From: Botryllus schlosseri
Taxonomy: Eukaryota
Direction of reading: 5' to 3'
Length of the DNA stretch: 64,000 bases
NCBI GenBank assembly: GCA_051294905.1
Contig: CM119382.1
Span: 992,001 to 1,056,000 of the forward strand
Position 1 is the stretch's first letter, and the number at the start of each line of letters is the position of its first letter. Positions 3,966 through 55,308 of the stretch are shown piece after piece. The notes below the pieces were generated by a model. It was given only the letters and a program-made list of their open reading frames with translations, was not told the origin of the DNA and did not search any database. The position numbers and the translations under genes are program-made.

Positions 3966-5192
3966 TAGGGCTGGGCACAATGATTCGATTACTCGAATCT
4001 GAATCGAGTCTTAATTTTAATAATTCGAGTCGAGTAGTAAAAGACGATTTTTTCGAATACTGAAATTATACGCTCCTCGCCACTGAAAGTTAATTTATCA
4101 ACGAAAATTACAGTTTCGATACTAATTTTCCATGTTGAAGCCTTGAAACATTGATTGGCCGTATTGCAACATAATAAACACATAGTACAAAGCTACAAAC
4201 GTTACTGGAAATAGCGCATTTTCGAAGTCATGATCATCCAACAACATTGTCACCAAGTGCAATGAAATCGGTATGGTCGAAAAGATACCAAAGTTGCCTT
4301 AATGTGATGGATAACAGGCATTTTGTTCTTTGTGGTGACATAAAAGGTACGTATTTGAACTTTGACATATCATATTCTATTATGACGTTATAATGAGTGA
4401 TACTCGATTACTCGACTCGACTCATAGCATATTACGTGATTCAGAATCGAATCACTCAGGTAGAGAGAGAGAGAGAGTCTTTATTTTCATCGAACCAAAA
4501 TACATAACAAACGGCAGTGATGGTGGTACAGAAAATATGCGTGCACAGTATTCGGTATTAGATAGGAATGATCGATAAGACCGTGAAGGTCATCTAGTCT
4601 GATCACACCAGCATCCAACAGGTACACTTGACTCAGAACAGTCTGGCTGTAAAAAAATGTTTAGTTAAGAAAGGAAAATAGAAAAAAAATTAAACAATGG
4701 TAGCAAATGATCAATGAAGCAATGTCTGGGCGAGGTAGGGCAACAGTGTTAGTGTAACAACAAGAGGTGATCAAGTAGGGCTTTTTTGAATCTATTATAA
4801 GGCAATTCACGGATATGTGATGGTAATGCATTCCAGATGATAGGTCCCGAGTAGTCGATAGATCTCTTACTGAGGTTGCTATTGGGTTGGGGTAAGTAGA
4901 CGTTTCCTTTAGACGAAGATCTCGTGTAATGAGAATGGACAGGACATGTTTAGCAGGTATGAAAAAGTCATCAAACACAGGAGGCAGACTATTGCAAAAA
5001 TATTTGTGAACAACTTTTGATACTTCGAAGCGATACAGTTCATCAACTCGCAAAATTCGATGCTTACGGTAGTAAGGCGATAAATTGGTACGTAAAGGTA
5101 CAGATGAGATCAGCCGTATCGCACGGTTTTGCAGGGTTCGAATTCTGCACAAAAATGTTGTACATGCATGTACTCGATTTTCCCCAGCCCTA
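3966..5192 (-). mobile_element. MITE family B copy, interrupted by a LINE and inserted in a Blackjack TIR
   Basis: Inverted homologue of 6520-7024; TSD atggcaac (3958-3965, 5193-5200); its last ~20 bp resume after the LINE at 5173. Confidence 0.88.
4463..5169 (-). mobile_element. 5'-truncated LINE (L2/CR1-group) 3' end
   Basis: ORF2 tail LQNRAIRLIS...YRFEVSKVVHKY, frameshift, RSIDYSGPIIWNALP; aataaa followed by a (TC)n tail; possible gta TSD. Confidence 0.85.
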
Positions 5193-6325
5193 ATGGCAAC
5201 CCTAAGCTGTACTCACTTTTCAAAATGCTCAGCTAGAACTAAAGCTAGTACTAAATCAGTGGATCCTAAAGTGGGCGCCAGCGCCCCCTGGGGGTGTTCG
5301 CGAGCGTGAAGGGGGCGCTGGTCACGAAATGGGCGATTGGGGGGGGGGGGCGCTGGCTCTAACAGTGGGGCGGTAGGGAGGCGCTGAGAGAAAATGAGGC
5401 GGTATAGGTTTAGAAGACAACTGCTGCGTAGTGTTGAAACTATTGATAAATAAAGCAGCTAAATTCGCAGTAAAAATGCGGAATCGATTCAGCTGTACCG
5501 GAAAAGTCCATTGTTACTTTACAATGTTGAACCTGCCCATCAATGGACTAATTTAGCAGACGGCAGTATCCCTGAAAAGCGTGGTTCCCTGAGTGTTGTG
5601 AGAATTTGAGCAGGTATTGCTCACTGCAAGGTGTGATGGCATTACAGAAACTGCCTTGCCTGATTTTACTTTGTGTCAAACGATCGTGGATTTACCACAG
5701 TGCCGCGACCGTGGCCTTCGACACAGCGTTTCTGGTTGCGAGAAATGATATCGCTTCCACTTGACGGGCATATTTTCCAAAATTTATGAGTAGAATATAT
5801 CCGTTCTTAGTAATGATGAACCTGATAAAGGTTAAAATGGCACTGTCCGGATTCAATGATAAGCCCGTGATATTTCACCGTAATTTGATGGAGAAACATA
5901 AAGCAATCAACTCAGAAAATTGCACGAGGAGATGGTGATTCCAGGATATATTCCAATAAAAAATTCCTCTCCGGATATTCAATCCATTCTGTGAAGTTTA
6001 CGATCATGAAATGACTGGGGATCTGATTACATTGCAGTGTAGAACAAGTTTGAGTTCAACCCAAAGTTCAGTATCTCCAATCAATCGTTTTGGATACACA
6101 ATTGAATCAAATAGCAATACTCTCACTGGAGTCGGTTCGAGTTTTTCATCATTGCCCTTCCCCGCTCATATTTGATAGAACGTGTTTTAAGTGCCGTGAT
6201 AAGGTGATAAGGCTCACAGCAGAAATCGACTCGACAGTACGGGACGTGAACCCTGGAGATTTTAGAATGAGATTGTTCTTATCACGACTCAAACCCAATA
6301 TGTCGAGGATGATGATAATAATACA

Positions 6326-9873: not shown

Positions 9874-10962
9874 TACCAAATATGTCTGACGCACGCGATT
9901 TCAAATCATGGTGAATTAAATTCCTTTGCGTGTCGCAGTTGTACTACTATCTACTCCAGGGGTGTCAAGCATACGGCCCGTCAGCTGATTTCATCAGGCC
10001 CGCGAAGCAATTTTGAGTAGATTGATAAATGCTTGAATATCCAGAACATTTCTAATAGAATGAACATTTCTAAAATATGTTGAGATTTTTAGTAAGAAAT
10101 ATAACCAATATACAGTCCTTCAAGATGACACATGTCAAGCATGTTTATGGGCAACATTATAACAACTAGACTACGGCGTTGAGGTTTCTAGTCACCATTA
10201 GTACCGTCGCTGACATTGACACCAAATTCCGAGAAGGCAAGAAAGTGCGGACTCATTTCACTGACGAAAGATTAGTTATTCACGGAAGAGAAAACGCCAA
10301 GAACCCTGATATGCAGGTTACATGGAAAATATATTAGAGGTCTCCAGCCTCTCGAGAAACTCGATTAGCGATATAATACTATAAAACAAATTCCAACGAC
10401 CGTGTTTCCATTCCTCACAACGCATTTGCAAGGTTGATGCCAATATATCACTAAAACGAACGGAGCGTAGAAATATGCCAACTTTAACCATCGTTAGAGC
10501 CATTGCTTTATAGGCTTATAACTTTACTCATCTGCCCAATCATCGTGATATTACGAATTCCACTGTTTGCAAATAAAAGGTTCAGCTAGAATCACTGGCG
10601 TAGCAGCGTGTGCTGCCGCCCCTGGCTCTCGCTTAAAATGCCGCCCCCTTCCCCTAAGTAGACCGCAGCAAATTTCGACATATATTGATGTTCAAGCAGT
10701 CCTGTCAATAAAAATAATTAGAACTAATATAATAAGGCCAGAAATAATAAAGACAAGAAATAGCGAACGAATGTATTGTACAAATAGAAAATCAATAGCC
10801 GCCTCAAAACTTAACTTTTCGGGCTTTCGCAGAAGCAAAATCAGCGGTAATATCCTCACATTAAAGTTTTTGAACGTAGTCTCTTTCTATAGACAGAATG
10901 GATAAATCTGATAGCCGATCATCATTCATGGTAGAACGTAAATAAGACTTAATCAGTTTGAG

Positions 10963-11415
10963 CAGTGCTTTTCAACCTTTTTCAGCTCCGATATCACTTT
11001 TTTTGTAAAATAAATTTCATTCGCACAAGCTAATCGAAAATTGTTATACAAAAAGAAGATGAAGATAGGCCTATACTTAATAATATTTTGTTCAGATGTG
11101 CAACAAACTGGCTACTATGTAGCTTAATCTATCAAGTGTCTCATTAAAAAGGCAACTTTTTTCGCTCGTTTTGCTTTCACTACGGCTTGTGACAATTACG
11201 ATTAGTGGTGCGACGTATTAAGTTTTTACAATTGCGTCGCAACTACAAATGTTACACTGACCTTAAATTTTCTATTAGGTTTATTTGAATAATTCCACCT
11301 CAGAAAAGTTAACAATTAATCACGATTTTCATTCGCACCATCTCCGTCATTCGCACTGCAATTTTTTTCATTCGCACAAGTGCGAGCGAACCGTCACGCA
11401 GGTTGAAAAGCATTG
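10963..11415 (+). mobile_element. hAT (Charlie-type) MITE; partial second copy at ~8630-8830
   Basis: TIR cagtgcttttcaacct / aggttgaaaagcattg; perfect TSD agtttgag. Confidence 0.88.
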
Positions 11416-12699
11416 AGTTTGAGCATAGTGTCCTATATCGTGTCGACACAGGCAAATCTCACGCCTCAGTGAAATTGTATCACGTCACAATTTCCATTTG
11501 GCTACAGGTAATTTGACGGTCATTTTTGACCGGCTTGCCGAGCATTAAATTTGGTTAAACAGGTATCAATCGAAAGCTGACTCTGCACTAATTACGAAAA
11601 TATAAATTTTATTCCGCTCGTGGCCCTGGAACTCCCACAATCAGCCTCGAATTTTTCATTGTTATGGAGATTGACATTGGGACGCAACAATGCTGTCTGG
11701 CGAAACGAGAGACTAGCTCAAGAGAAAAAGAGTTAGACAGCATTGTTCAACTACTTCAAGTAGTTTTAGGTTGCCTATGGAAAAAGTACTTCTACTTGTA
11801 CTTGAGTAGATTTTTTCTTCTGTACTTCTACTTCTACTTGAGTAGCTTTCTTGACTACTTTGACCACCTCTGCCTGAAACTGAAGCTGTAGCGATAAGAA
11901 GACAATATCACCAAGCTCCCTTAGGATTAACGGTATCATATCCAAATCGAATTATCAATGCCATGACAAAATCCTTATCCCAGTAATCGTGAAAACAGCA
12001 CTCAAGGCCAGCAGGAATTTTTGAGCAGAAGCATATGTTTATTTACCTGGATACAACGAGTTAAGCAATCTACATCAGGAAGATATTTGCAAATGAATAC
12101 ATACGGTGACACATATATAACCTTATCCCGTCCGAACCATCGAAATTGATACCTCCAGGCCAAAGAGTAATCAAAACAGTCACATCACCCAACCACTTTT
12201 GCCTTGACTACCAGCTTAACGCGCAACTATCAACTTAACCCAAAGATGGAGGCCAATTGATCACGCAAATATCGCGAGTAGCGCACTCCAGTGTTTATAT
12301 AGCTCAGTGGGCTATATTTACCTTATATTTTCAATGGTCAATTTCAATACATTATGACGTCACAATTGAATATTCGTGACGTCATGGCTTAAAAACAAAA
12401 GGCAATAAAAACATGTTTTAAATTAGGGCCTTGTTTTAAACATGTTTGATATTACCTGATTTTTGTTTCAAATGCAACCCTAGTCTAAAGGGTGTGTGGT
12501 ACTATCACTCTCGCAGAACTGAGCTCCAACGCGACACAGTTGAATCACCAGTCCGATTAGCCTTTTCTACACCTAACAAAAATTGCTGTTTCATTTTGAA
12601 AAATGAATGAAGCTAAATATTACTTCATAGTATGTACCAAAGCGTGTGTCGAATTTTTTGACCACGTGGCGCCCTCTAAAAGCGAAATAGTTCGCGGTC

Positions 12700-13720
12700 T
12701 GTATTCAAACCCTACCACCCGTAATATACGGGTGTGAATATACACATGTGGAACACCAAACTAGAACCTACCTCACACATTATGTTATTACACAACATTT
12801 AATTCAAGTGATACTTGCACGTAGTCACGTAGGATTAACAACCGCGATATAACTCTGAGTTAGGTTCTGTTTTCGTGTACCACCTTTCGGGTTTCCGCTA
12901 AGAGTGTAGCACTTCGAACACACTGACTGCAAGATTTGGGAAGATGACTAAAATTTTTATCGGTAGAGCTGAGAGATGTGGTGTGTTCGAAAATGTAGAG
13001 CACGTAATTCATACTTTTACATCTTCGGACGGGCCCGTTGTTTAGGCTTACCATATTTCGGAAATGAAAAAAGAGGACACATTTTCAGAAATTTCAGACA
13101 TGCAAAACTGGAGAAGAATTCTCAAAAACCGGTAAATTTTTCCCACTTCATGATCGGTTGACTAAAAAAAAAAGGTCATCACTTCCGCTCAGAGCTCAAA
13201 ATCACGTTTTTCACTCCACATTGCCAGGTGGATGACTAAAAAAAAAAAAAAGAACGTCTTCTTTTCGCTCAGAGCTGATATCACCACTTTTCCCTCCGAA
13301 ATACCCGCCGGAGCTTCACTTCTGTGCTAATTTGCGGCATATCACTCGCAATTTCCTCTAAATCTGACCTAAATTTTCAAAAAAGAGGACAAAATCTCAA
13401 AAAAGAGGACAAAAGGGCGTCCTCCGAGGACACTTTCAAAAAAGTCAAAAAAGAGGACAAATCCTCTTAAAAGAGGACGTATGGTAAGCCTACCGTTGTT
13501 ATCAATTAATTCGCTGCGTGTTATTATTTCGTTAACTTCCATCCGTTGGGCACGTGCGTACCACAGTGTATAACCGTACAAAGCTAATGGAATCGTCCAA
13601 ACATACCAGACTAGGCTATAAAGAGATACTTCTTTCGTGAGCCGCACACGATTCCTAATCGTCATTTCATCACGGAGTGCGTTACTGTATCCTGAGGAGA
13701 TCAGATTGCCAGGACAGCAC
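12700..13720 (-). pseudogene. Possible GPCR TM5-ICL3 remnant split by a Blackjack-type MITE
   Basis: Removing 13043-13500 joins ORFs 13369..13665 and 12860..13054 in frame (IDNNG|PVRRCK), about 135 open codons with LYSLVWYVWTIPLALYGYTLWYARAQR. Confidence 0.35.
13043..13492 (+). mobile_element. hAT-Blackjack-type MITE
   Basis: TIR taggcttaccata / tatggtaagccta; aagaggac subterminal repeats; perfect TSD ccgttgtt. Confidence 0.9.
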
Positions 13721-16700
13721 TATTCGGCGCCAGGAATTTGGGTGCATGTGGACAATTCAACGTGTATTGTAGGCCTATATATCGAAGGTGTGGTGATCGC
13801 TATCGTCTCATTTCTGTTTTGTTATTAGTGCTTAATTGGTTGATTGTCTGAACGTTATCTGATGCAAGCCTATAAACCATTGCGTTTCGTTGTTTGTCAA
13901 TCAATCAGTGAACAGATTATATTTTAATCTGCCCAAGACACACACACAACGCATAATGCGATATACAAGACACACAATGCGATGTAATGAACAGATAGGG
14001 AGATGAGGAACGACCAACCAGTTGGGGTCTCTTGAACTGGCATCCACCTCGACCTAGTGCCCGATGTCACAGTTTTTTTCGATGTTGTCTTATTAATAAA
14101 AGTCTTGGATGTACAGAGGTGTGGTCGATTCACGTCGGAAGGTTAGGGCCAACGTGCGGGATCATTTTCGGCAGATATTTTGGCAGCACAATTCGGGCAT
14201 AGTCTCATATTGTCCGATCTGTTATGTCTTGGTCTGCCGGCAATGGCAGGCGCAGAAGTTTTACTATAAATTATGCTTAATTTATTTTGGGTGGGGAATG
14301 ATGCTCATATCAAAATGAAGACACCTAGCGACATTAAATCGCGCGAGGCGTGAGTAAAATATTCGATTTGTGTAAATTTTCCCAAAATATCATGTAATTT
14401 ATGTTGATTTATGTAATAATTTCGGGCCCCCTTCGATCCCGCCCCCAATTGTTTCTTATGTGGTCAGATCACTGTTCAACCTACGAAGTCGCTGGTGGTA
14501 ATTACAAAAAGTTCACCACTTTCGTCCAAGCACCACTGGCTGTCCCTTGCGCTAATCTACAAGCTTTTGACCAACGGCACCTTTGCTGTGAGTCATAAAA
14601 ACGAACATCTATCATACTACACATTTAATACATTAGAATACAGGTGTAAAAAATGAACTGCGCGTCAACGATGGTGTTAAATAAAACAACCATTAAAGCA
14701 TCACCACAACAACAAAAAATCAGATTGATTCAACAGTGACGTCTTTTCCGAGTACCTGTTACGTCGTTAAGGTCATTTGTAGATGCGAAACATAGATCCG
14801 CAAGGAGTATATTCTCTACTTTTAAAAGACATCGAACAACTATAGCGGACATCCGTCGAGGGTACACGAAATCGATTAACCATTCTCCTATCACACGCGA
14901 ATGAGGTCACGCTCCCGCTTCCGTTGTCGAGAAACGAGACAAAAATCGAATCGTCTTTAAAAAAAGAAGCGGACGCCAGGAAACGTTATTCCGTCGAATG
15001 GGAGCCAAATGAAACGCAGAATAGAAAAGCTGTGATTGAAATCGATGAGATCTCAATTCCGACTACTGTGAGTTGGCTTCGAACCATGCTTGGACTATTA
15101 GATAATTTTGGTTGTATATCTATAATCTAAAGGACTTTGCGACGGACGTTCGGTATACATAGATTATATAAAACGTTGTCTTGTCCTTGATGCTTTTGCG
15201 GCATATACACCGACTCATGATATAGCCTACATGCACACGATCTTTGCATATGCGTACCATGAGTGCATAATGTGTATATGCCGCTGGACAATAAAGGTAT
15301 AGAAACAGCCTTGTTAGATTTTCTCAGTCTTGCACCACCCCTCCCTGCTATCCCGGTAATGCTGGACGCCAATCGGGAAAGCCATGGTTACCAGTGTTAA
15401 TAACCAGATCTAGCTAATTTATATCTAATTTCTGGTTATATTGGTAATGCTATGTGAAAACCGCACAGTGTCAAACGACCTAAGCCAATTATCGTACTTA
15501 TTGGAATGAGCTCCGATTTGATATGAACTGAACTTTATTTATATTACATTTAATACGGAATTGAATTCAATTTCCAAGATTTTCCGAATTCGAACTCCAA
15601 TTCGAATCAAATTTGAAATAGAAACTGTCTAGATATCATTCTGATTTGATTCCAATTTAGAACAGCTGAAAATCGGCGAATAGTTGGCCAATTCTTGCTT
15701 AGGGCGTTTCAGGATTAGGGATATGCGCATTTTCTGTTGTTTGTGGTATTCATGGTGTTTGTCGACTACAATGTTCATTTGCACCTGGCCGATATTTAAT
15801 ATTGCTGCCGACTTGTAGCACGGCCCATTTCTAGATAAACCTGCAACACTTGGGTAGGAATTCTGGAGTCGACCTCGATGCATTTTCTGTCTTGGCATCA
15901 CGACAGAATACATGCATGTGCGGGCTTACTATTTCACTCTCTCGGATTTTAACGGATCAGTAACAAGCGATAAAACCAAACTTATCGTAAGGCCTGTATC
16001 CTAAACATCAATGTCAGCAGAAATTCCACCACTTCATCAACTTCGATCATCAGTCAGAAACCGCACGAAAAGCGAAGGCCGCAATTACATGCTCGGAACC
16101 CGACCGCAATTTTGCAAGGCGACTTCTAAATTTCTAATTGCTGTCGTACAGAATTGAAAACTTCCCGTCGAATATTTACAAGCATGCATAAGGTTTACTT
16201 TCCGTCGGTGACAGCGGATTGCCACGCTATGTATCGCGAGTAGGCAAACCTCTGCCGCCAGCAGTATCGAGGCAAGAACTTGAATGAATCGTGAGACAGC
16301 AATAAACCAAGAAGATAACATCGTACGAGAGAGTATAAGGTCTGTGTTCGTGAGGGCAGGATATTCTGAAACAAGGGATTAATCGCTATCTCATGCAAAC
16401 CAAATCCAGTATCTATTAATTAGACACGGCGATAACGCCCTAGGCTTAAAAATAAATCGCTCCTATTTTAGCAAGTATATACATGCCAGTGGAGTCGTTT
16501 TAGGGTTGCGCTAAACTTAAAACATACTTGGACAACTAGAAAAATTTCAGCTTTTAGTTTAGATTAGATTTGAATTGAAGGTAAATACTTTTGCAAAATT
16601 GGACTAGACTTAGAACTGTAGCTTCACTAATTTCTAAAATTAGATTGGAATCAAAATTGCTGAATTCGAGAAAACTTTGACATATAGAATGGACTTCATT

Positions 16701-17016
16701 TCATAAAAAATCAGTATTCAGTGTTCACGAGAATGGCAAATGTCTGTACAGTACAGCAAGCTTGACTCGTTTCGCGCTATAAGCCCACAGTTCTCCTGTA
16801 GCCTTTTCATGATAAACAGAAACTAGATTACAATTAAAATTAGAACAAAGAAACATTCACAAATTATAGTTTGAGTTAGATTTCTGGTATTTCGCACTAA
16901 TTAGCCTAATTAGGGAACTACGATTATCAAATTGTCCCAGGCTGGTTGCAGATTTCAATTCCCCGTTGAAAAAGCAAAGTTAATATATTCGTATGTTTTC
17001 ACAGTTACAATTCAAA

Positions 17017-17182
17017 ATGAGATACATATTTTGTTTATTGCTGATCGCTGTGTTGTGCGGGCTAGCGACCACGAATTCGGTCGTAAAGGTGTCCCCAAGA
17101 TTAAGGAAGATTATCTGTAGGAAATGTTTCGGGAGGATGTATCGATATTGCTCGGCGAGGATGAGACTGACAAAACGCAGCG
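17017..17182 (+). CDS. Secreted cationic Cys-peptide precursor, coding exon 1 (signal peptide + peptide 1)
   Basis: ATG lies 12 nt after a ttttcacag acceptor. MRYIFCLLLIAVLCGLATTNSVVKVSPRLRKIICRKCFGRMYRYCSARMRLTKRS, then a phase-1 gtaagt donor. Confidence 0.72.
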
Positions 17183-17250
17183 GTAAGTTTGCCATCCATG
17201 TCAGAGTTGAACGACTTGAATGTTTTCAGCTTTTTCGCAACACATTGAAA

Positions 17251-17838
17251 CAATGGTTTCCAAACTTTTTCAGCTTATGGCGCACTGGAAAAATTATAAA
17301 ACACTCGCAGCACACTTAAGCTAAGAAAATTGCTATTAAAAGATAGATGTTGTTGTTTATATGAACAGAACATATACAACAGAAAAAAGTAGCATTGTTG
17401 ACAAACATACCGGAATTTCATCTTTAATTCCAAGCAGTGACTCTCATCTAGCTTTTAATTTCAGTCAAAAAAGAGAAGCCATGTTCAGATAGTCACGAGG
17501 ATGGAAATATTATCATCGTTTGGATTGTTTTTGCACCGATTAGGGAATAGGATTTGAAAGCAGACAGCCAGATCTCGCCTAATTTCATTTGTAGAAACAG
17601 CTTTTTTATAAAATGGGCATTTTCGTAAATGCTGAAATAATACTTGACTTAATTATCATGCCATGTTTGGTCTCATCGTGATTATTTATCAGCTGTTGAA
17701 GAAGTTAGACCGCCTTTAAGTCGTATGGGGTGGTCTGCCGGCCTTTTAAAAATATTTGTACAGTTCTTTTCTAAAAAATCCAAAAGTATTCGTGGCACGC
17801 CTGATGATCTGTGGCGGCACACTGTTTCGAAATCACCG
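17251..17838 (+). mobile_element. hAT-type MITE in the peptide-gene intron
   Basis: Ends caatggtttccaaac / gtttcgaaatcaccg; TSD degraded. Confidence 0.55.
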
Positions 17839-18220
17839 GATTAGAATGCTAGCTACGCATTAATTCAAATTAGAGTTAGAATTACTGCATTCGCAAAAGC
17901 TTGGAAAAAGAGTTAAAGTCCAGATTAGAAATAAATAAAACGAAAATGAAGTTCATATCAAATCGAAGTTTATTCTAAGAACGATAATGGTAAATGTCTG
18001 TACAATGACCTTGACTCGTTTCGCACGAGATAGTTCCCCTGTAGCAATTTCAGGAAAAGCAGAACTTAGATTCGAATTAAAATAAGAACATAGAGACATT
18101 TCGCAAATTAGATTATATTTAGATTACCGATATTTCGCTCTGACCGGATAATTAGACCCCCATATCGTCTGATTCTTGTCGATATCGCTGTTTGCTTACA
18201 ATTGGTTCTTTTACGCGCAG

Positions 18221-18348
18221 TCGGCGACGTATCGAGCAGCGTTAACGACCATCACTCAAGGCCAAAACGCGCGGCTTATCGGAAAGTTCGCATCCAGTTG
18301 AGAAGCTGCAGCGTCTGTCGGGACATTTGCTATAAGAAAAGGATTTGA
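18221..18348 (+). CDS. Secreted cationic Cys-peptide precursor, coding exon 2 (spacer + RPKR + peptide 2)
   Basis: ggttcttttacgcgcag acceptor, phase 1; VGDVSSSVNDHHSRPKRAAYRKVRIQLRSCSVCRDICYKKRI*. Confidence 0.68.
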
Positions 18349-18484
18349 TGTCACTCCGTCTTCGCAAAAGGTTGCAGACATAGAAGTAATGCCCACGATC
18401 GCGAGTCCGGGCGAAGAATATACTCGACGAACTCTGGACAATTTCTCTCACTAATTCCGGTCGAAGTACTTTGTACAGCGATAG

Positions 18485-18886
18485 AGAGAGAGAGAGAGAG
18501 TCTTTATTTTCATCGAACCAAAATACATAACAAACGGCAGTGATGGTGGTACAGAAAATATGCGTGCACAGTATTCGGTATTAGATAGGAATGATCGATA
18601 AGACCGTGAAGGTCATCTAGTCTGATCACACCAGCATCAAACAGGTACACAGTCTGGCTGTAAAGAAGGAAAATAGAAAAAAAATTAAACAATGGTGGCA
18701 AATGATCAATGAAGCAATGTCTGGGCGAGGTAGGGCAACAGTGTTAGTGTAACGACAAGAGGTGATCAAGTAGGGCTTTTTTGAATCTATTATAAGGCAA
18801 TTCACGGATATGTGGTGGTAATGCATTCCAGATGATAGGTCCCGAGTAGTCGATAGATCTCTTAGTTAGGTTGCTATTGGGTGGGG
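18485..18886 (-). mobile_element. Second, shorter copy of the same LINE
   Basis: Near-identical to 4463-4890 apart from two small indels; possible TSD gatag. Confidence 0.85.
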
Positions 18887-19559
18887 GATAGTAAGATATC
18901 AAGTGATTCAATCGCATTGTAGTGAAACAGCATAATGTTCCGTGGAGTATACTTGTGAATCTAATTTATTCAATTTATACAATTTACATCGTAATCGTAA
19001 ATGCAGAGCTAGAAAACTCCAAAATATCAGCCCTTCCAAAGTAGATTCGAAGTCGAATGACTGAATTCGCAAAAGCTTGTGAATATACGTTATTTCCGGA
19101 TAAGGAATAAATGCAATAGCAATCAACTTTAGTTCAATCAAACAAAAGTCTATTCTCATATGCGTACAATATCTGTACAACCAGCTTGGCTCGTTTCACG
19201 CTATACAGTTCTCCTGTTAACGTTTTCTGGAAATCCATCAATTTGGTTAGAATTAAAATGTGAGCATGGAAGCACGTCCCAATTTAATTACAATCACAAG
19301 AGAGCTGGAACTATCTAGCTAGTTGCCCAAGTACGCGCGAATGACTAATCACGGTATAACATTTTTCACCCCCAATTCTGTTGCATTCTGTGATGCAACA
19401 ATATGTCGCCAGCCGAAATTTCTTGCAATCCACCGAAAATACGGACGTGTACTATATTTTATGTTGCTATTTATTCGTGTTTTGCTGTTCTCCATTTGAT
19501 ACCGAATATTTAACCAGGAATTTTTTGTAGAGAGTCATAATATTTACAAAACTGGACTT

Positions 19560-26862: not shown

Positions 26863-27017
26863 TCACGCTCCGTTCAGATTTAACTGGTCGTACTGAGAAT
26901 GACTTGGTGTCGAAATAGAAAAGTTATTCGGCGTGTCCGCGCCTCCCGAGCTGTTATTGCGATAGAGTCGGTCGTAGGCGGATCTGGGAGCGTGCTGGTC
27001 GTTCCTCCCGAATGTTC
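26863..27017 (-). CDS. DCBLD-like terminal coding exon
   Basis: actacag acceptor, phase 1, ends in TGA; GTFGRNDQHAPRSAYDRLYRNNSSGGADTPNNFSISTPSHSQYDQLNLNGA*. Confidence 0.82.
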
Positions 27018-30000
27018 CTGTAGTAGAATGACGAGTATTTCATAACAGAATTTCGTGTCTGAATCAGTCAGCGTTAGGTCAAAAAATTGTTTACAAAGTC
27101 ATGCATTTGGCAATTCGTTTCTATCGCAGATGTTTGCACTGTGGGTGAACTTATCATTTGATATTTTACAGCTTGTAGCCTACTCTATAGGCCTACCGTT
27201 GTAGACGGCCCATTTTCTGCTCATTGCTAATCATAAACGGTCAAATGAAACAAATACATTTCTCCATTGTTTGCAAGCTACTTGGTAACGACAGACACTT
27301 TCTACCCGAGAATGTAGGAAAAGTATTTTTCGTTGTACTACAACAAATTTTAATTTTTTCTTCCCTAATGCGTGATGCAACTACTGGAAATCTTCATGGG
27401 TCCAGATTTCGTCAAAATAAAGTTTCTTCATGTAAAAATTTGTCTGTTTTTAAGTCAAAAAAGTTTTCCAGGCCAAACTACTTCGTGAGGACAGACAGTT
27501 CCAACCAGAAATGGAGATAAGTAGTACAATTATAACATTATCTGCCAAAAAACCTAATTTACATACACGAGGGAAAAATTTTGTCAAATTAGGTTTTTTT
27601 AAAGGCCTAAAAATGTCAAAATTTTGATTTTTTAGTTCAAAATCTTCTGTTTTTCGGCAAAAAAATCACTTTAGTCATGAACGTCATTCGGATTCCGACT
27701 GGATTTTGCACAATTTTTTGTCAGTAGGATCGGATTCCAATTCTCTATAAAATTTTGTTACGGATCTTCTCCAGATAGTTGTAACTTATATTTCGGATAT
27801 TTGTGGACAGTTCTGGCCTTAAGTGAATTTTGATTACAAGCCAGAAGGAAAATTTCTCAACTCGATAACTAAACACGGACAGCCAACAACTTTTGATAGC
27901 ACTGGTAGCACTGTAAAGTTGCTCTGTCAAGGGTCCGAGAAAATATAAATCAGCTAACCCTATCCATAGCTTTTGTAAAGCATATGGTCTGACTGTATCT
28001 TCGCATAGCTGTAGAATTGGGATTCCTCGAAAAAGTTATTCAAGGATTCTCAGACATCAATTCGTACTGGTGAATCCTATGTATATTTTGGTAGACCCTA
28101 GGGCGGTTGAAGAGTACTGCTTTAAATAATTAATAGATAAATTATGTTCAAAATAAATAAAACCTCTTGTAGACTCACCGATTGCAGAGTCGCCACCGTC
28201 AGGCGAAGCCTTTGCTTTAATCGGAAGCGCCGGAACCTCGTCCATTACCGGACGCGGAACCTTATAAGAAGGCGGCCTTCTGATCACGCCCACCTCATTC
28301 TGCTCGGGTATACTCTCCCGGCCGTACATCGCGTGATTCAACGCCATAGGAGCGCCGTCCGCGCCCGGCACCGAGGAATAATAAGGGTCGCTATGCTGCT
28401 GCTGAAAAGGGGGGTAGGAATGCGACGAATTGTTTGACGAGGAAGAATGTCTCTGCATTCGGGAGGGGGATTGCGAATTGCCCCTTCTTAAGTTCGCGGC
28501 GCGAAAAGGCGCTTCCCCCGCGGAATATCGCGCTTCGTGCGAAAAAGTATGGTTGCGATTGAGGTTGTTCGGGGGTTGAAAAGTCCCGTTTTGTTTCGGA
28601 CCGGGCAAAAAACTGGACATCGGCGGACGCCCGTTCATACCCTGGCCTTGTATTTGAAAAGCGGGCGCGTTGCCCCCGTCGATGCCCCACATTCGCTGCA
28701 TCGTGTCTGATTTTCGGCTTCGGTTTCCCAAGCTCGAACCGGTGGAAGCCTTCGACGAACCGCGTTCGATGTTGGCGGCGACTCGCTCGTCGTCGATGGT
28801 GTGGTACTCGTGGTCGTCTTCTTCTGAGGATACAGAAAGCTCGCGTCAGACTGGTGTGGATACTTATCTAGTTGGTTGACGGACATCTGATTACTGTTCT
28901 TTGAGTAATTATAGTGATATTTGTAGTTGCTAGTTTTGAAAAGGGAGTAGTTCTAGTTCTAGTTGCGCATTCAAAACAAAAATACATTGCCAAACAACTA
29001 TGAAACACGTGTCGTTGTTTGACGTGAATCGTGACATCTGTGTTCTGTTGTGTGATGTTCTTGCAGACATTGCTAGCTTAGAGTCATCACTACCAACAGT
29101 GACGTAGCCAGGGTGTGGATTTTGGGGGTCAAAACCTTTCCCGTTTGAATCTCAAAACCCCTTCCTTTTTAATTGCCAATTCTATCTCCAATCTGTCTTG
29201 GCTCGTTTGCAATTCAGTGATTAGTATGATCACTGATCAGTTATTAGTTAGTTGTGTTTTAGTTAGGTAGTTGCCGATTTTTAGATGTCGCTAGTTCTAG
29301 TTCTAGTTCTAGTTTTGAAAACCCGATAGTTTGTACAAATCTGGCAAGAGTGTATTCATGACGTAACAACGGAAGTGGCTTCACCTGAGAAACTGTCTTC
29401 GTTCGCGGAATGGAAAGACCCCTTTTGCGGCAGCAGGCCGTTTTGCATCGCCACCACGGGTTCTGATGTCACGCCCGGCGGTAATGCTGAAAGTACATCG
29501 AAATTATGGGACGAAAAGCAGGATTTTAAGATCCCGCCCATAAAATGTAATTCTAGTTTCCGTGAGTGGAAATAGTTGTATTCGCCAATTTCAGGTTTAA
29601 ACGCCAAATACATGGATGTTAAATAGGTGTATTCATCATATTCCCACTACAGTGTGAAATTTTTCGTTTACAAGGGTAGGGAATGGGTGTGTTCATCATA
29701 AATCCACCCTAGGGTGAAATTTCTAGTTTTATTGGTCTGTAAACAGGTGTATTCGTAATATTTCCACCACAAAGTGAAATTTGTTGCTGCCGTGGGTGGA
29801 AAATAAGCATCTTCCAGCCGATTTGCAACATACGGTGGAAATTGTTGCTATGATACATGGGTGGAAGGCGGGTGTGTTTTCAGATTCCCACCACAGCATG
29901 GCGTGTAAATCACGTAAACGCCACTTTCAGGTGGAAGCGTGAAGTTCAGAACCATCACACTCCTGCGATAAATCTCCATTCCAATTGGTGGTGTACTGTA

Positions 30001-54000: not shown

Positions 54001-55308
54001 TTCCTACGACAAGAATTATCGAGTCGTCCAAGTCTGTCCATATACTGTCGAAGTCAGACTGTCAATCAGTGTCAATCTATACCGTGGTAGGCAAATAATC
54101 TGTTTGTCGATCCCCGCTTAAGTGCACTGCTTCCTCTGCGAGAGACACTCTTATCTCCCTAATCCAACGCTGGGAATCAATCCCCTACTTGGGTGGGTTA
54201 GGGCAGTGGCTCACGACTCTTGTCGGCTCGAGGGGCAGTAAAATTTGAAAATTTTGCAAGCCGTCGTACCTTTAATAATCTAAATCTGCCTGGATTGGAA
54301 CGACGACAGATGTACGCATCTCAACACAAATATTTTGTCAGAATTATTCAGAAATTTTGAGTCGATTTCGAGTATCACTTATTATCGGGGTTGTAACCAA
54401 TTCACAAAGTTCCGAATCCCAAGTCAATCTCACTTTTATAGTTTTGACTCGAGTCAAGTCAATTCAATTCACCCTCGAGTCAAGTCCCAGTACAAGTCAG
54501 TGAGTAGAGGGTCGAGTCCGAGTCATAGTGTTGTAACGTGAGACCGAGTCCAAGTCATAGTTTTCACTGTTTAGTTTTGAGTTCAATCCGGTCCAACCCA
54601 CTTTTTACAACTCTCCTCGAGTGATATAGAATGGCTCGCATTCATAATATCGTAATTTTCCACAATCCTACCAGTTTCTGGCCCTATTTTCCAAGTATCA
54701 GGGTTGTTAGACTGGGGCCTACGATAACTTATTAAGTTATCGTAGGCCCCGGTTAATACCAATAATGTGGTGAGTTTGCTGTTCTTCGAGGTTACAATTA
54801 AATGTGTGCCCTGGCTGTCCAAGTCTCGAGTCACATGATTCAGTTCGAGCCATGTAAAAATGACTCGAGTAGAAGTCGAGTCAATACACAAATTGACTCG
54901 AGTCGAGTCTTTTTACGCATTTGCAAAAATGACTCGAGTCAAGTCGAGTCACCAAAACATCGTGATTCACCGATTCGATCACTCGAATCCTTGTGTCCGG
55001 CCGTATACATACAAGCTGATATAAAAGTATCTCACCTAGAGATAACTTCGAAGGTCCTACCCCAGAGAACAGTTCAACATGTCCTTTCGCGCATTCGTCC
55101 TCGCCGGCGCCCATGTTAAACACGCCAAAGTTTAATAAGATGGTAAACCCAACGGGGACGATGATTTCCCATTGACACGTGATATGGCGATCGCTGTCGT
55201 CTGTGATCCCAGCGGGGGCCGCGTCCGGGCGTGTTAATGGAGAATGGGGGTAATTGGGGGAGGTGAATGTCCCGGTACTGCCTCGTAACGTACCGCCGCA
55301 TGATGAAA
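26863..55308 (-). CDS. DCBLD: Discoidin, CUB and LCCL domain-containing receptor (DCBLD1/2-like), 18 coding exons, 5' end missing
   Basis: Exons join in phase with AG/GT ends to 2492 nt (2 nt + 830 codons including stop). Domain order is CUB (CGGTLRGSTGTFTSPNYP...CQWEI...YCGS...GFLVSY), LCCL (CPGGC...YRDDSHLCKAAVHAGVI...GG...NGVTS), FA58C (ITASSYW...WLEIDLG...IAARFIRIYP...LFGC), TM, Tyr-rich tail. This order defines the DCBLD family. Confidence 0.9.
28179..28823 (-). CDS. DCBLD-like exon: large cytoplasmic exon
   Basis: tcctcag / gtgagt, 645 nt, phase 1-1, GC-rich open frame (ORF 28057..28731 extended upstream); EEDDHEYHTI...RRPPSYKVPRPVMDEVPALPIK...DSAI. Confidence 0.88.
29385..29486 (-). 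CDS. DCBLD-like exon: cytoplasmic
   Basis: ctttcag / gtgaag, 102 nt, phase 1-1; ALPPGVTSEPVVAMQNGLLPQKGSFHSANEDSFS. Confidence 0.8.
30280..30372 (-). CDS. DCBLD-like exon: cytoplasmic
   Basis: ttttcag / gtgagt, 93 nt, phase 1-1; FQYKNKKSRKRNRPMVPDHFQNADYKDTLLP. Confidence 0.85.
30436..30494 (-). CDS. DCBLD-like exon: juxtamembrane
   Basis: tttgcag / gtgagt, 59 nt, phase 2-1; KKDQPDTPLQIIPDNNNIG. Confidence 0.85.
30858..30948 (-). CDS. DCBLD-like exon: transmembrane helix
   Basis: attttag / gtgagt, 91 nt, phase 1-2; ENSILIIAIVAALSVTSILLAALVLFLVKKR. Confidence 0.92.
32941..32977. mobile_element. 37-bp hairpin insertion
   Basis: 16-bp perfect arms cggggcctacgatact, loop actta; flanks ggacgga / ggacgta. 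Confidence 0.75.
33316..33455. other. Assembly gap of 140 N inside a DCBLD-like intron
   Basis: Run of N. Confidence 1.
33459..33483 (-). CDS. DCBLD-like micro-exon at the gap edge
   Basis: atttcag acceptor, 25 nt TESEGGIG. The donor gtg runs into the N gap; phase 0-1 fits the flanking exons. Confidence 0.6.
33547..33596 (-). CDS. DCBLD-like exon: linker
   Basis: tgttcag / gtgagt, 50 nt, phase 1-0; AGVPTSIELPKKTNPPK. Confidence 0.75.
34491..34562 (-). CDS. DCBLD-like exon: Pro/Thr linker
   Basis: tcatcag / gtgagt, 72 nt, phase 1-1; DIERPGDLTVPLTMVALSSTGPPP. Confidence 0.75.
35163..35310 (-). CDS. DCBLD-like exon: FA58C end
   Basis: tcaacag / gtaaga, 148 nt, phase 0-1; IFPGNKNIFMNMTNNFIRPRIAARFIRIYPTPVSSKKLRYSLQVALFGC. 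Confidence 0.92.
36006..36133 (-). CDS. DCBLD-like exon: FA58C
   Basis: attgcag / gtgaga, 128 nt, phase 1-0; GIMTHGSSDRFFTTKSYRIAYRLSGNATSEWTFYREEGVSHDK. Confidence 0.9.
36393..37734 (+). mobile_element. hAT (Charlie-type) non-autonomous element
   Basis: TIR cagtggttcccaac / gttgggaaccactg; cgccccc subterminal repeats; perfect TSD gtctacat. Confidence 0.9.
38225..38340 (-). CDS. DCBLD-like exon: FA58C
   Basis: tgaacag / gtaccc, 116 nt, phase 2-1; RWKPENAIFGEQIEAWSPNDPTAMQWLEIDLGESKNLT. Confidence 0.9.
38523..38812 (-). mobile_element. hAT-Blackjack-type MITE, same family as 13043
   Basis: TIR tagggttaccata / tatggtaacccta; TSD agctagaa / aactagaa. Confidence 0.87.
39301..39432 (-). CDS. 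DCBLD-like exon: LCCL end and FA58C start
   Basis: ttttcag / gtaagg, 132 nt, phase 2-2; GSFTAMKIQFERPDADCNDKITFSKSQITASSYWTEDEEDQSQ. Confidence 0.88.
39721..39854 (-). CDS. DCBLD-like exon: LCCL core
   Basis: tacacag / gtgagt, 134 nt, phase 0-2; DSHLCKAAVHAGVITDRFGGSLEVKKLPGDYFYWASEANGVTSE. Confidence 0.93.
39948..40417 (-). mobile_element. MITE family A copy
   Basis: cagggttgcaacgactcgagtc ... ggttacaacccag, flanked by attctag on both sides. Confidence 0.83.
40709..40778 (-). CDS. DCBLD-like exon: LCCL
   Basis: gttgcag / gtgagt, 70 nt, phase 2-0; VICPGGCANVSETVVRGTSTYRD. Confidence 0.9.
41548..41602 (-). CDS. DCBLD-like exon: LCCL start
   Basis: atttcag / gtgagt, 55 nt, phase 1-2; NFVSCADRGTDHVGSGSF. 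Confidence 0.85.
44283..44426 (-). CDS. DCBLD-like exon: CUB C-terminal part
   Basis: tttgcag / gtaaga, 144 nt, phase 1-1; DIYCGSDELRKAQIAASNMTVVFKRRSDFSGTGFLVSYIATSPRESVG. Confidence 0.92.
44458..44841 (-). mobile_element. MITE family A copy
   Basis: cagggttgta ... ttacaaccttg; perfect TSD atgcttgc. Confidence 0.88.
45090..45133. mobile_element. 44-bp hairpin insertion, diverged
   Basis: cgggacctacc...cgtaggcaccg; perfect 7-bp TSD ctctgat. Confidence 0.75.
45920..46360 (+). repeat. Dispersed element carrying a ~37-bp agtagttctagttctagttgc array; also ~28890-29340, 30530-30830, 38382-39080, 41660-41900, 52800-53070
   Basis: Copies share a tagtttgtacaagtctg end; internal 109-bp duplication here (45991 vs 46100). 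Confidence 0.78.
46780..47247 (-). mobile_element. Older MITE family B copy; further fragments at ~39480-39660, 52150-52380, 58100-58160 and 61240-61380
   Basis: Shares attatacgctc...aaagttaattta...gattggtcgtat with 3966-4460. Confidence 0.72.
48166..48885 (+). mobile_element. hAT-type MITE
   Basis: Ends caggggtcgggaa / ataccgacctctg with atggctc subterminal motifs; TSD aagtacat / cattacat. Confidence 0.72.
51060..51600 (+). repeat. AT-rich dispersed element with aattagaattatagctacacag arrays (ten or more copies, both orientations)
   Basis: Shared gcttggctcgtttcgcac..tacagttc..tgtagcattttcaggaaaacc block at ~16760, 18010, 19185, 43080, 51465, 53865, 55710; inverted at ~45200, 49440, 60560. 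Confidence 0.72.
54386..54990 (+). mobile_element. MITE family A copy, right end decayed
   Basis: Collinear with 6326-7433 once the nested insert is removed. Confidence 0.78.
54713..54751. mobile_element. 39-bp hairpin insertion inside MITE A
   Basis: 17-bp arms ggggcctacgataactt, loop att; flanks gttagac / gttaata; absent from other MITE A copies. Confidence 0.72.
55036..55308 (-). CDS. DCBLD-like exon: CUB N-terminal part
   Basis: ttcag acceptor, gtgaga donor, 273 nt, phase 1-1; VSSCGGTLRGSTGTFTSPNYP...CQWEIIVPVGFTILLNF...GPSKLSL. Confidence 0.92.

What the first reader, a model, noticed from the sequence alone, without database searches (positions are those of the whole stretch)
17017..18348. 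Candidate novel two-chain cationic cysteine peptide precursor
Seen: a 97-aa spliced ORF made of a hydrophobic signal peptide; peptide 1 NSVVKVSPRLRKIICRKCFGRMYRYCSARMRLT (10 K/R, no acidic residue, C-x2-C-x7-C); KR; a 16-aa spacer; an RPKR furin-type site; and peptide 2 AAYRKVRIQLRSCSVCRDICYKKRI (8 K/R, 1 D, C-x2-C-x3-C). Known: the signal-B-C-A layout with a phase-1 intron in the connecting peptide is that of insulin/relaxin genes, but those have 2+4 Cys with a CC pair, absent here. C-x2-C-x3-C also ends the six-Cys ascidian turgencin antimicrobial peptides, which are single-chain. Inference: three Cys per chain implies inter-chain disulfides, giving a processed, strongly cationic heterodimer that could be a host-defence peptide or an unusual hormone. 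I recognise no described family with this pattern.
Basis: partly seen in the sequence, partly recalled or inferred. Interest (0 to 1): 0.85.

Follow-up and report, generated by a model that had tools for sequence, protein, structure and literature searches.

The report
Conserved sea-squirt two-chain cationic peptide gene
This is a real two-exon sea-squirt gene for a small secreted precursor, conserved across three ascidian orders but never characterised, that is probably cut into two positively charged, disulfide-linked peptides (an undescribed hormone-like or defence peptide).

Summary

It is not a chance ORF. An exhaustive HMMER search found homologues in Styela clava (two "uncharacterized" genes, best E 3e-16) and Phallusia mammillata. 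It also found an unspliced exon-1 ORF in a Logan contig. A profile search added Clavelina lepadiformis.

- All six Cys and the KR-S site are invariant. The basic RxKR-type site before peptide 2 is conserved as a basic cluster.
- The signal peptide and spacer diverge.
- The phase-1 intron sits at the same codon in the window, Styela and Clavelina.

No Pfam family (including Insulin and Pro-MCH), solved structure, turgencin or paper matches it. It is therefore an ascidian-restricted orphan family with an insulin-like signal-B-C-A layout and a new 3+3 Cys framework.

Weak points:
- Four RNA runs showed no exon-1 reads and no splice junction.
- AlphaFold models have low confidence.
- Processing, disulfide pairing and function are inferred.

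I lean towards a signalling peptide (about 0.45-0.5) over an antimicrobial peptide (about 0.27). The scan noted another cationic Cys-peptide family elsewhere in this genome (s1-253984); I could not test whether it is related.

The parts
17017..17079 (+). Signal peptide, aa 1-21 (MRYIFCLLLIAVLCGLATTNS). The cleavage point is approximate, after A17 to S21. Alignment with the homologues' ...A|K sites favours S21|V22.
   Evidence: Styela and Phallusia have a hydrophobic N-terminus of the same type, with poorly conserved sequence (4-7 of 21 identical). In Clavelina it appears only if an upstream in-frame ATG is used.
17080..17172 (+). Peptide 1 ('B-like' chain), aa 22-52: VVKVSPRLRKIICRKCFGRMYRYCSARMRLT. 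Net charge is +10, with three Cys in the pattern C-x2-C-x7-C.
   Evidence: The conserved core is IC-R-[RK]-C-[WF]-x-[RK]-[ML]-[YF]-x-[YHP]-C in all 6 relatives. tblastx conservation with Styela covers 17086-17187.
17173..17178 (+). Dibasic cleavage site KR (aa 53-54), followed by an invariant Ser.
   Evidence: K53, R54 and S55 are invariant columns in alignments A1 and A2.
17183..18220 (+). Phase-1 intron of 1038 nt (GTAAGT...CAG). It contains one copy of a ~330-nt interspersed repeat at about 17860-18140.
   Evidence: Styela (AAA AGA AGT G|GTGAGT ... TTTCAG|TT) and Clavelina (AAA CGA AGC C|GTAAGT ... TTTCAG|TA) have the same position and phase. Repeat.
18221..18258 (+). Connecting peptide (with 17179-17182: aa 55-68, SVGDVSSSVNDHHS). 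It is weakly acidic and variable in length and sequence among relatives.
   Evidence: Only 2-5 of 13 spacer residues are identical to the relatives, and their spacers are about 22-38 aa long.
18259..18270 (+). Furin-type site RPKR (aa 69-72).
   Evidence: Styela (both paralogues) and Clavelina have RRKR here; Phallusia has SRKK within a basic cluster.
18271..18333 (+). Peptide 2 ('A-like' chain) core, aa 73-93: AAYRKVRIQLRSCSVCRDICY. It has three Cys in the pattern C-x2-C-x3-C and ends C-[FY] as in the relatives.
   Evidence: 13 of 21 residues are identical to Styela P0001. C85, C88, C92, R76 and R79 are invariant. tblastx with Styela covers 18253-18333.
18334..18348 (+). C-terminal extension KKRI plus the TGA stop. 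It is present only in this species. KKR may be a further basic processing site that would leave the C-terminus at Tyr93, as in the relatives (inference).
   Evidence: The relatives end at C-F, C-Y-S or C-F-N.

Best explanation
A real protein-coding gene with two coding exons. It is a member of an ascidian-restricted, so far uncharacterised family: Styela clava LOC120338163 and LOC120338504, a Phallusia mammillata transcript named after Ciona LOC100184058, and a Clavelina lepadiformis gene. Its 97-aa product enters the secretory pathway. Disulfides form in the single-chain precursor. Proprotein convertases then cut at the invariant KR|S and at RPKR|, and perhaps at KKR near the C-terminus. This removes a variable, weakly acidic connecting peptide. 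What remains is two strongly cationic chains of about 31 and 21 aa. Each chain has three invariant Cys, an odd number, so at least one disulfide must link the chains. The layout works like an insulin/relaxin-type prohormone (signal-B-C-A) but with a new 3+3 Cys framework. I commit to the reading that the product is an extracellular signalling ligand (hormone- or neuropeptide-like) made in a rare cell type or stage. What is shown: the gene model, the homology, the conserved Cys and basic sites, and the intron position. What is inferred: secretion, cleavage, the two-chain disulfide linkage and the function.
For: - Homology: phmmer against 1.84 billion proteins gave E values of 3e-16 to 6e-6 to four proteins. 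Profile searches added Clavelina. The named relatives are all ascidian and called 'uncharacterized' or 'unnamed' by their sources; the Logan contig hit has no taxon label.
- Conservation pattern: six Cys, KR-S and two Arg of peptide 2 are invariant. Peptide 1 is 11-15 of 31 identical and peptide 2 is 7-13 of 21 identical. The signal peptide (4-7 of 21) and the spacer (2-5 of 13) are far less conserved. Conserved mature peptides with a variable spacer are typical of prohormones.
- Intron: a phase-1 intron lies at the identical codon in the window, Styela and Clavelina.
- Locus comparison: between this window and the Styela locus, the two exons give the strongest matches.
- Copy number: one copy in this 64-kb window and two unlinked paralogues in Styela. 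This is unlike clustered, fast-evolving antimicrobial peptide families.
- Amphipathicity: helical hydrophobic moments are mostly modest at 0.18-0.37 (0.53 for Clavelina peptide 2).
- Expression: no reads in 7-10 million records of each of two bulk RNA runs. This fits a rare cell type better than ubiquitous blood cells.
- Literature: the roughly 40 characterised Ciona neuropeptides are described as homologues of cholecystokinin, calcitonin, GnRH, galanin-like peptide, tachykinin and vasopressin plus Ciona-specific peptides, and the terms cysteine and disulfide do not occur in that paper (PMC6475428).
Against: - No transcript evidence here for exon 1 or for the 17182>18221 junction in four RNA runs.
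- The only RNA signal is low-depth contigs colinear with the genome over 18236-18471. These could be read-through from the adjacent highly transcribed LINE fragment. The word shares likewise show that the RNA runs hold exon-2 words but no exon-1 words.
- Very high net positive charge (+10 and +7) with a neutral-to-acidic propiece is also the classic layout of antimicrobial-peptide precursors.
- AlphaFold2 models have low confidence (pLDDT 53 and 56) and give no fold.
- There is no peptidomic, receptor or expression data.
- Only six sequences define the family.
Confidence: 0.45

Rival explanations
1. Host-defence (antimicrobial) peptide precursor. The molecule and its processing are the same, but the cationic disulfide-stabilised product kills or binds microbes, and the acidic spacer neutralises it during storage.
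For: Conserved net charge of +6 to +10 (peptide 1) and +5 to +10 (peptide 2), with neutral or acidic spacers. Ascidians make Cys-rich cationic antimicrobial peptides such as the turgencins, whose C-terminal half also reads C-x2-C-x3-C (PMC7024374). Silence in ordinary RNA-seq could mean inducible expression.
Against: Mature peptides are conserved across three ascidian orders while the signal peptide and propiece are not, which is the reverse of the usual antimicrobial-peptide pattern. There are only one or two unclustered copies. Hydrophobic moments are mostly modest. There is no similarity to turgencin A (hhalign probability 0.5%). The family is not among the Ciona in-silico antimicrobial candidates shown in PMC7387483.
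Confidence: 0.27
2. Not a heterodimer. Either the precursor stays as one folded chain (the basic sites are not used), or the two peptides are released separately, each with an internal ring plus one Cys used for homodimers.
For: No direct evidence for cleavage or pairing. C-x7-C in peptide 1 could form an MCH- or somatostatin-like ring on its own. The spacings (3 and 8 against 3 and 4) do not fit a simple three-rung helix-helix ladder (sequence).
Against: The invariance of KR-S and the conserved basic site before peptide 2, flanking a freely varying spacer, is hard to explain without cleavage. An odd number of Cys in each part, all six invariant, is most simply satisfied by pairing within the precursor before cleavage.
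Confidence: 0.12
3. A highly diverged offshoot of the insulin/relaxin superfamily (true homology, not only analogy).
For: It has a signal-B-C-A layout with basic junctions and a phase-1 intron near the start of the connecting peptide. Cys 1 to Cys 3 of peptide 1 span 10 residues, against 11 in insulin B chains. From my own recollection, not checked here: some C. elegans insulin-like peptides lack the A6-A11 bond and carry 3+3 Cys.
Against: No member hits Pfam Insulin at E<=10. There is no CC pair, no C-x3-C-x8-C A chain and no B-chain C-x11-C. There are no PDB sequence hits.
Confidence: 0.08
4. An MCH-type peptide. The ring C-[WF]-x-[RK]-[ML]-[YF]-x-[YHP]-C (Clavelina CWKRLYRPC) recalls vertebrate MCH (CMLGRVYRPC, recalled from memory).
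For: An R-[LVM]-Y-[RK]-x-C motif is shared. In four of six sequences a basic residue is penultimate to the second Cys, a feature listed for MCH-type peptides (PMC4772807).
Against: The peptide is N-terminal in the precursor, not C-terminal. The ring is C-x7-C (vertebrate MCH has x8 by my recollection; ambulacrarian MCH-type peptides have two more residues than vertebrate ones). W or F follows the first Cys instead of Met or Ile. There is an extra Cys and a second Cys-bearing peptide. No Pfam Pro-MCH hit was found.
Confidence: 0.04
5. Not a secreted peptide at all: either a chance ORF or pseudogene, or a small basic intracellular zinc-ribbon protein (CxxC...CxxC).
For: No transcript support in this species. 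Weak Pfam Rpr2 zinc-ribbon matches appear in 3 of 6 members (best E 0.014, below the cut-off).
Against: HMMER E is 3e-16 across orders, the ORF and splice sites are intact, and the intron is conserved. A signal-peptide-like N-terminus is seen in the window, Styela, Phallusia and the Logan relative, and in Clavelina if the upstream ATG is used. The basic sites flank a variable spacer.
Confidence: 0.04

Closest known systems
Uncharacterised ascidian proteins: Styela clava LOC120338163 (XP_039262033) and LOC120338504 (XP_039262455), Phallusia mammillata CAB3262844 ('LOC100184058'), and a Clavelina lepadiformis unnamed product
   Same: True homologues, 33-47% identical overall. They share six invariant Cys, the KR-S and RxKR sites, a two-exon structure and the phase-1 intron at the same codon.
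   Different: The window protein has the shortest spacer (14 aa against about 22-38). It has F instead of W after the second Cys, RPKR instead of RRKR, and a unique C-terminal KKRI extension. None of the relatives has a described function.
Insulin/relaxin superfamily prohormones
   Same: Signal-B-C-A precursor, basic cleavage sites at both junctions, a variable connecting peptide, a phase-1 intron in the connecting peptide, and an expected disulfide-linked two-chain product.
   Different: The Cys framework is 3+3 (C-x2-C-x7-C / C-x2-C-x3-C) instead of 2+4 (C-x11-C / CC-x3-C-x8-C). No Pfam Insulin match was found. The chains are far more cationic.
Turgencins A/B (antimicrobial peptides of the ascidian Synoicum turgens; PMC7024374)
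   Same: Ascidian origin, cationic, six Cys, and C-x2-C-x3-C as the last three Cys. Turgencin is a helix-loop-helix held by three disulfides.
   Different: Turgencins are single chains of about 34-36 aa. Their first half is C-x3-C-x4-C and they are C-terminally amidated. hhalign finds no similarity (probability 0.5%). The family here has no C-terminal Gly for amidation.
MCH-type neuropeptides (vertebrates; echinoderm and hemichordate precursors, PMC4772807)
   Same: A cationic disulfide ring containing R-hydrophobic-Y, with a mostly basic residue penultimate to the closing Cys.
   Different: The position in the precursor is wrong (N-terminal), the ring is one residue shorter than in vertebrates, there is a third Cys, and there is a second Cys-bearing peptide. 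No profile match was found.

Membership tests
Ascidian orphan family (Styela LOC120338163-like) | Significant sequence similarity over both Cys-bearing segments | tested here: met
   phmmer E 3.3e-16, 1.1e-8 and 6.1e-6. Profile E 2e-48 to 4e-9 among members.
Ascidian orphan family (Styela LOC120338163-like) | Six Cys as C-x2-C-x7-C ... C-x2-C-x3-C, KR-S after peptide 1, and a basic RxKR-type site before peptide 2 | tested here: met
   Invariant columns C34, C37, C45, K53, R54, S55, C85, C88 and C92.
Ascidian orphan family (Styela LOC120338163-like) | Two coding exons with a phase-1 intron directly after the KRS codons | tested here: met
   Window, Styela L001 and Clavelina L002.
Insulin/relaxin superfamily | Signal-B-C-A precursor with basic junctions and a phase-1 intron in the C-peptide | tested here: met
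   Sequence and splice sites. The intron phase of insulin and relaxin genes is from established knowledge and was not checked here.
Insulin/relaxin superfamily | B chain with two Cys as C-x11-C, and A chain CC-x3-C-x8-C | tested here: not met
   All six members have C-x2-C-x7-C and C-x2-C-x3-C, with no CC pair.
Insulin/relaxin superfamily | Match to the Pfam Insulin profile, or to the insulin fold | tested here: not met
   No Insulin hit at E<=10 in any of the 6 members. No PDB sequence hit. The fold is not testable: AF2 pLDDT is 53-56 and Foldseek gave 0 hits.
MCH-type neuropeptide precursors | [quoted passage not shown] | tested here: not met
   The MCH-like ring lies directly after the signal peptide and has a third Cys. 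Criteria are from PMC4772807.
MCH-type neuropeptide precursors | Met or Ile after the first Cys, and a basic residue penultimate to the second Cys | tested here: inconclusive
   W or F follows the Cys in all members. The penultimate residue is R or K in 4 of 6.
Turgencins | Single-chain peptide of about 34-36 aa with C-x3-C-x4-C-x8-C-x2-C-x3-C, amidated | tested here: not met
   Only the last three Cys match in spacing. The Cys halves are 39-64 aa apart with basic sites between them. There is no C-terminal Gly. hhalign probability is 0.5%.
Proprotein-convertase-processed secreted peptide precursors (general kind) | Actual cleavage at the basic sites and secretion | not testable with these tools
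   This needs peptidomics. Only the conservation of the sites is shown.

The most novel reading that the evidence does not exclude
An ascidian-wide, previously undescribed two-chain peptide hormone. It has a new 3+3 cysteine framework, is built on an insulin-like precursor plan, and acts through its own still unknown receptor. That would be a chordate signalling system missed by all neuropeptide catalogues of Ciona and other tunicates.
Probability: 0.35. Interest if true: 0.8.

Novelty: new variant of a known kind. Interest (0 to 1): 0.62.

Why it matters
[quoted passage not shown] The characterised Ciona peptide set described in PMC6475428 shows no such two-chain Cys peptide.

A conserved orphan precursor, present in stolidobranch, phlebobranch and aplousobranch ascidians, is a concrete and testable candidate. 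It has an insulin-like processing plan but a new disulfide framework. It could be a new ligand-receptor system, or the first ascidian defence peptide family conserved across orders.

Its chains are short (about 31 and 21 aa), so they can be synthesised and tested directly. The finding also fills an annotation gap: no gene with exactly this product is on record for this genome.

Tried and rejected
- **Word-index protein search with the single sequence:** nothing found. The exhaustive HMMER search was needed.
- **Exact-product look-ups:** the 97-aa protein, the 105-aa version from the upstream ATG, and the 108-aa unspliced ORF all returned no record. Look-ups for P0001, P0003 and P0004 also returned nothing. 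The DNA of the Logan contig that carries P0002 could not be fetched.
- **ESM Atlas on each exon:** only weak "small secreted peptide" look-alikes, such as Toddler, conotoxins and GPR15L, at scores of 0.75 or below. These are not evidence.
- **Pfam on all six members:** only sub-threshold zinc-ribbon noise.
- **PDB sequence search:** one chance hit at E 1.6.
- **Structure:** AlphaFold2 on two alignments gave pLDDT 53 and 56. Foldseek against the PDB gave 0 hits. I drew no structural conclusion.
- **Turgencin A:** hhalign found no similarity.
- **MCH idea:** rejected as membership and kept only as a low-odds lead.
- **Tandem duplication idea:** I considered that the ~1.2-kb spacing of repeats means exon 1 and exon 2 arose by tandem duplication. 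Only a ~330-nt interspersed repeat is shared, not the exons, and the intron is also present in Styela and Clavelina.
- **Synteny:** none detected beyond the gene itself.
- **Literature:** searches by LOC ids, peptide motifs and topic found no description of the family.
- **RNA:** the single read-laying run gave no junction. In hindsight, the unclassified runs X27-X29 and X6, which hold 91% of the exon-2 words, would have been worth laying.
Full report
**1. The observation**

- The ATG is at 17017.
- Exon 1 is 17017-17182 and ends AAA CGC AGC G|GTAAGT.
- The intron is 1038 nt and ends TTTTACGCGCAG at 18220.
- Exon 2 is 18221-18348 and ends in TGA.
- The product is 97 aa. The intron is phase 1 and splits codon 56, one residue after the KRS that follows peptide 1.

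Two details differ slightly. The spacer is 14 aa before RPKR. An in-frame ATG eight codons upstream (16993) also exists, but it does not fit the homologues' N-termini.

**2. Is it more than chance?**

Statistics on the window alone are weak. By a crude rule, 15 ATG-ORFs with a signal-like N-terminus occur on the two strands. The word-index protein search found nothing.

The exhaustive phmmer search of 1.84 billion representatives did find relatives:
- P0001, E 3.3e-16
- P0002, E 1.7e-11
- P0003, E 1.1e-8
- P0004, E 6.1e-6

Their sources are as follows.
- Two "uncharacterized" RefSeq proteins of Styela clava: LOC120338163 and LOC120338504.
- One Phallusia mammillata entry, named after Ciona LOC100184058.
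- One ORF on a Logan contig. This is an unspliced read-through of exon 1 in a closer relative, and the similarity even continues into the first intron codons.

Profile searches added a Clavelina lepadiformis protein. Its annotated start is too far downstream; an upstream in-frame ATG supplies the signal peptide MKLCLNYLILLLLVLVLKA.

The family is therefore present in stolidobranch, phlebobranch and aplousobranch ascidians. Nothing outside ascidians was found.

**3. What is conserved**

In the six-sequence alignment, the invariant columns are:
- all six Cys (C-x2-C-x7-C and C-x2-C-x3-C);
- I33 and R35;
- the KR-S after peptide 1;
- K71 of the basic site before peptide 2;
- two Arg of peptide 2.

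The site before peptide 2 is RRKR in Styela and Clavelina, RPKR here, and SRKK within a basic cluster in Phallusia.

Identity to the window protein, region by region:

| Region | Identical residues |
|---|---|
| Signal peptide | 4-7 of 21 |
| Peptide 1 | 11-15 of 31 |
| Spacer | 2-5 of 13 |
| Peptide 2 | 7-13 of 21 |

The spacer also varies in length, from 14 to about 38 aa.

The relatives end at C-F, C-Y-S or C-F-N. The window protein continues Y-KKR-I. A further basic cleavage with carboxypeptidase trimming would give the same C-terminus; this is inference.

The intron lies at the same codon and phase in the window, Styela (G|GTGAGT...TTTCAG) and Clavelina (C|GTAAGT...TTTCAG). In a tblastx comparison of the 64-kb window with the 14.5-kb Styela locus, the two strongest matches are the two exons. 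The other four segments are short and lie elsewhere in the window.

Together these results establish a real gene under constraint. The constraint falls on the two Cys-bearing peptides and the basic sites.

**4. Transcript evidence in this species**

This is the weak point. RNA-labelled runs hold words from the exon 2 / 3' region only.
- X1 holds 0.71 of 21 words there, which equals all of its 0.09 of 164 words over 16900-18500.
- X2 and X3 show the same pattern.

The single read-laying run covered X1 and X2 contigs and X12 and X13 raw reads.
- There were no reads on exon 1.
- There was no 17182>18221 joint.
- The only signal was low-depth contigs colinear with the genome: 18236-18419 at depth 2.8, and 18297-18471 at depth 4.2.
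- Depth rises steeply into 18520-18924. That region is a multi-copy LINE-like fragment on the minus strand, so the exon-2 signal may be read-through from it.
- The two bulk runs (7 and 10 million records read) had no reads on either exon.

The gene is therefore silent or very rare in those samples. The Phallusia entry appears to come from a transcript set, judging by the form of its accession and name. The Styela entries are RefSeq gene models. I could not check their RNA support.

**5. What it is not**

- No member hits any Pfam family above noise. There is no Insulin and no Pro-MCH hit, only sub-threshold zinc-ribbon matches caused by CxxC...CxxC.
- There is no meaningful PDB sequence hit.
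- The ESM Atlas gives only weak look-alikes among small secreted peptides.
- AlphaFold2 on two alignments is unconfident (pLDDT 53 and 56). It merely suggests helices over both Cys segments. Foldseek finds nothing.
- Turgencin A shares only the spacing of the last three Cys. Its sequence and its C1-C6/C2-C5/C3-C4 helix-loop-helix come from PMC7024374. hhalign probability is 0.5%.
- The ring of peptide 1 recalls MCH; Clavelina has CWKRLYRPC. The MCH-type criteria in PMC4772807 are not met. These are a C-terminal position in the precursor, two Cys, and Met or Ile after the first Cys.
- Searches of 8.4 million papers by LOC ids, motifs and topic found no description.
- PMC6475428 describes the roughly 40 characterised Ciona neuropeptides as vertebrate homologues plus Ciona-specific peptides, and the words cysteine and disulfide do not occur in it.
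- The Ciona in-silico antimicrobial candidates shown in PMC7387483 do not include the family either.

**6. How it most likely works**

- **Secretion.** The signal peptide directs the precursor into the ER. This is inferred from the conserved hydrophobic N-terminus.
- **Disulfides.** The six Cys pair within the single chain. Each peptide carries three, so at least one bond must link the two parts.
- **Cleavage.** Convertases cut at KR|S, a dibasic site of the regulated-pathway type, and at RxKR|, a furin-type site. This releases the variable connecting peptide.
- **Product.** The result is a two-chain peptide of about 31 + 21 aa with net charge around +14 to +17.

This is the working plan of insulin/relaxin prohormones, including a phase-1 intron in the connecting peptide. 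The defining Cys framework is absent, however. I therefore say it works like an insulin-type precursor but do not file it as a member.

**7. Function: signalling ligand or defence peptide**

For a signalling ligand:
- The mature peptides, not the propiece, are conserved over very deep ascidian divergences.
- There are one or two unclustered copies per genome.
- Amphipathicity is mostly modest.
- Bulk RNA shows no reads.

For a defence peptide:
- The cationic charge is extreme and conserved, and the spacer is neutral to acidic.
- Ascidians have a record of Cys-rich antimicrobial peptides.

I put about 0.45-0.5 on a signalling ligand and about 0.27 on host defence. The rest falls on no heterodimer, true insulin homology, an MCH relation, or a non-secreted or non-functional product.

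**8. Novelty and context**

Relatives exist in databases, but only as uncharacterised predictions. The family, its processing plan and its 3+3 Cys framework are undescribed as far as these tools can see. I rate it a new variant of a known kind, namely convertase-processed two-chain Cys-peptide precursors.

This fits Styela clava, a styelid, being the closest named relative. I did not verify it.

Another note (s1-253984) reports an unrecognised family of secreted cationic Cys-peptide precursors on another piece of this genome. Whether it is related could not be tested here.

Noticed in passing
window 18500-18924 (- strand); second copy near 4510-4850: A fragment of the 3' end of a non-LTR (LINE-like) retroelement. 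The ORF at 18744-18917 (-) reads ...GPIIWNALPPHIRELPYNRFKKALLDHL..., and the element ends at a (GA)n run at about 18480-18500. RNA depth is very high in all four runs, with reads that fit only partly, so it is a multi-copy transcribed repeat. It abuts the 3' UTR of the peptide gene and may explain the weak RNA signal over exon 2.
   Followed up: partly
window 16590-16900, 17860-18140, 19038-19260: Three direct copies of a ~330-nt interspersed repeat, about 70-75% alike and about 1.2 kb apart. One lies upstream of exon 1, one in the intron just before exon 2, and one downstream of the gene. The exons themselves are not part of the repeat.
   Followed up: partly
window 59729-59755 (+); RNA loose ends at 18570 and 18830: RNA reads of X12 and X13 carry the same 5' letters, ATTGGAGTATTTGGTTGTATTA, after the SMART oligo end (...ACATGGG). 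They join the repeat at two different places, as a trans-spliced leader would. The window holds a 21-of-23 match, GATTGGAGTATTTGGTTGCATGAAG, followed by GT. This may be a spliced-leader RNA gene or a variant copy. Rfam found no hit.
   Followed up: partly
window 16990-17016: Just upstream of the start codon there is a pyrimidine run followed by CAG (cgtatgttttcacag, ending 17004). It lies between the upstream in-frame ATG (16993) and the ATG at 17017. If the mRNA is trans-spliced there, only the 17017 ATG would remain. This is speculative.
   Followed up: no
window 54884-55375 (-) and 26863-28823: A CUB-domain exon (Pfam E 3.8e-9) lies on the minus strand. The peptide gene sits about 8.5 kb beyond that gene's 3' end, on the opposite strand.
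   Followed up: partly
L002 (Clavelina lepadiformis) 5800-6100 and 10891-13360: The annotated Clavelina homologue (81 aa) starts at an internal Met. An upstream in-frame ATG adds a signal peptide. A Peptidase_M14 (carboxypeptidase) gene lies 3.5 kb downstream on the opposite strand; this is probably coincidence.
   Followed up: partly
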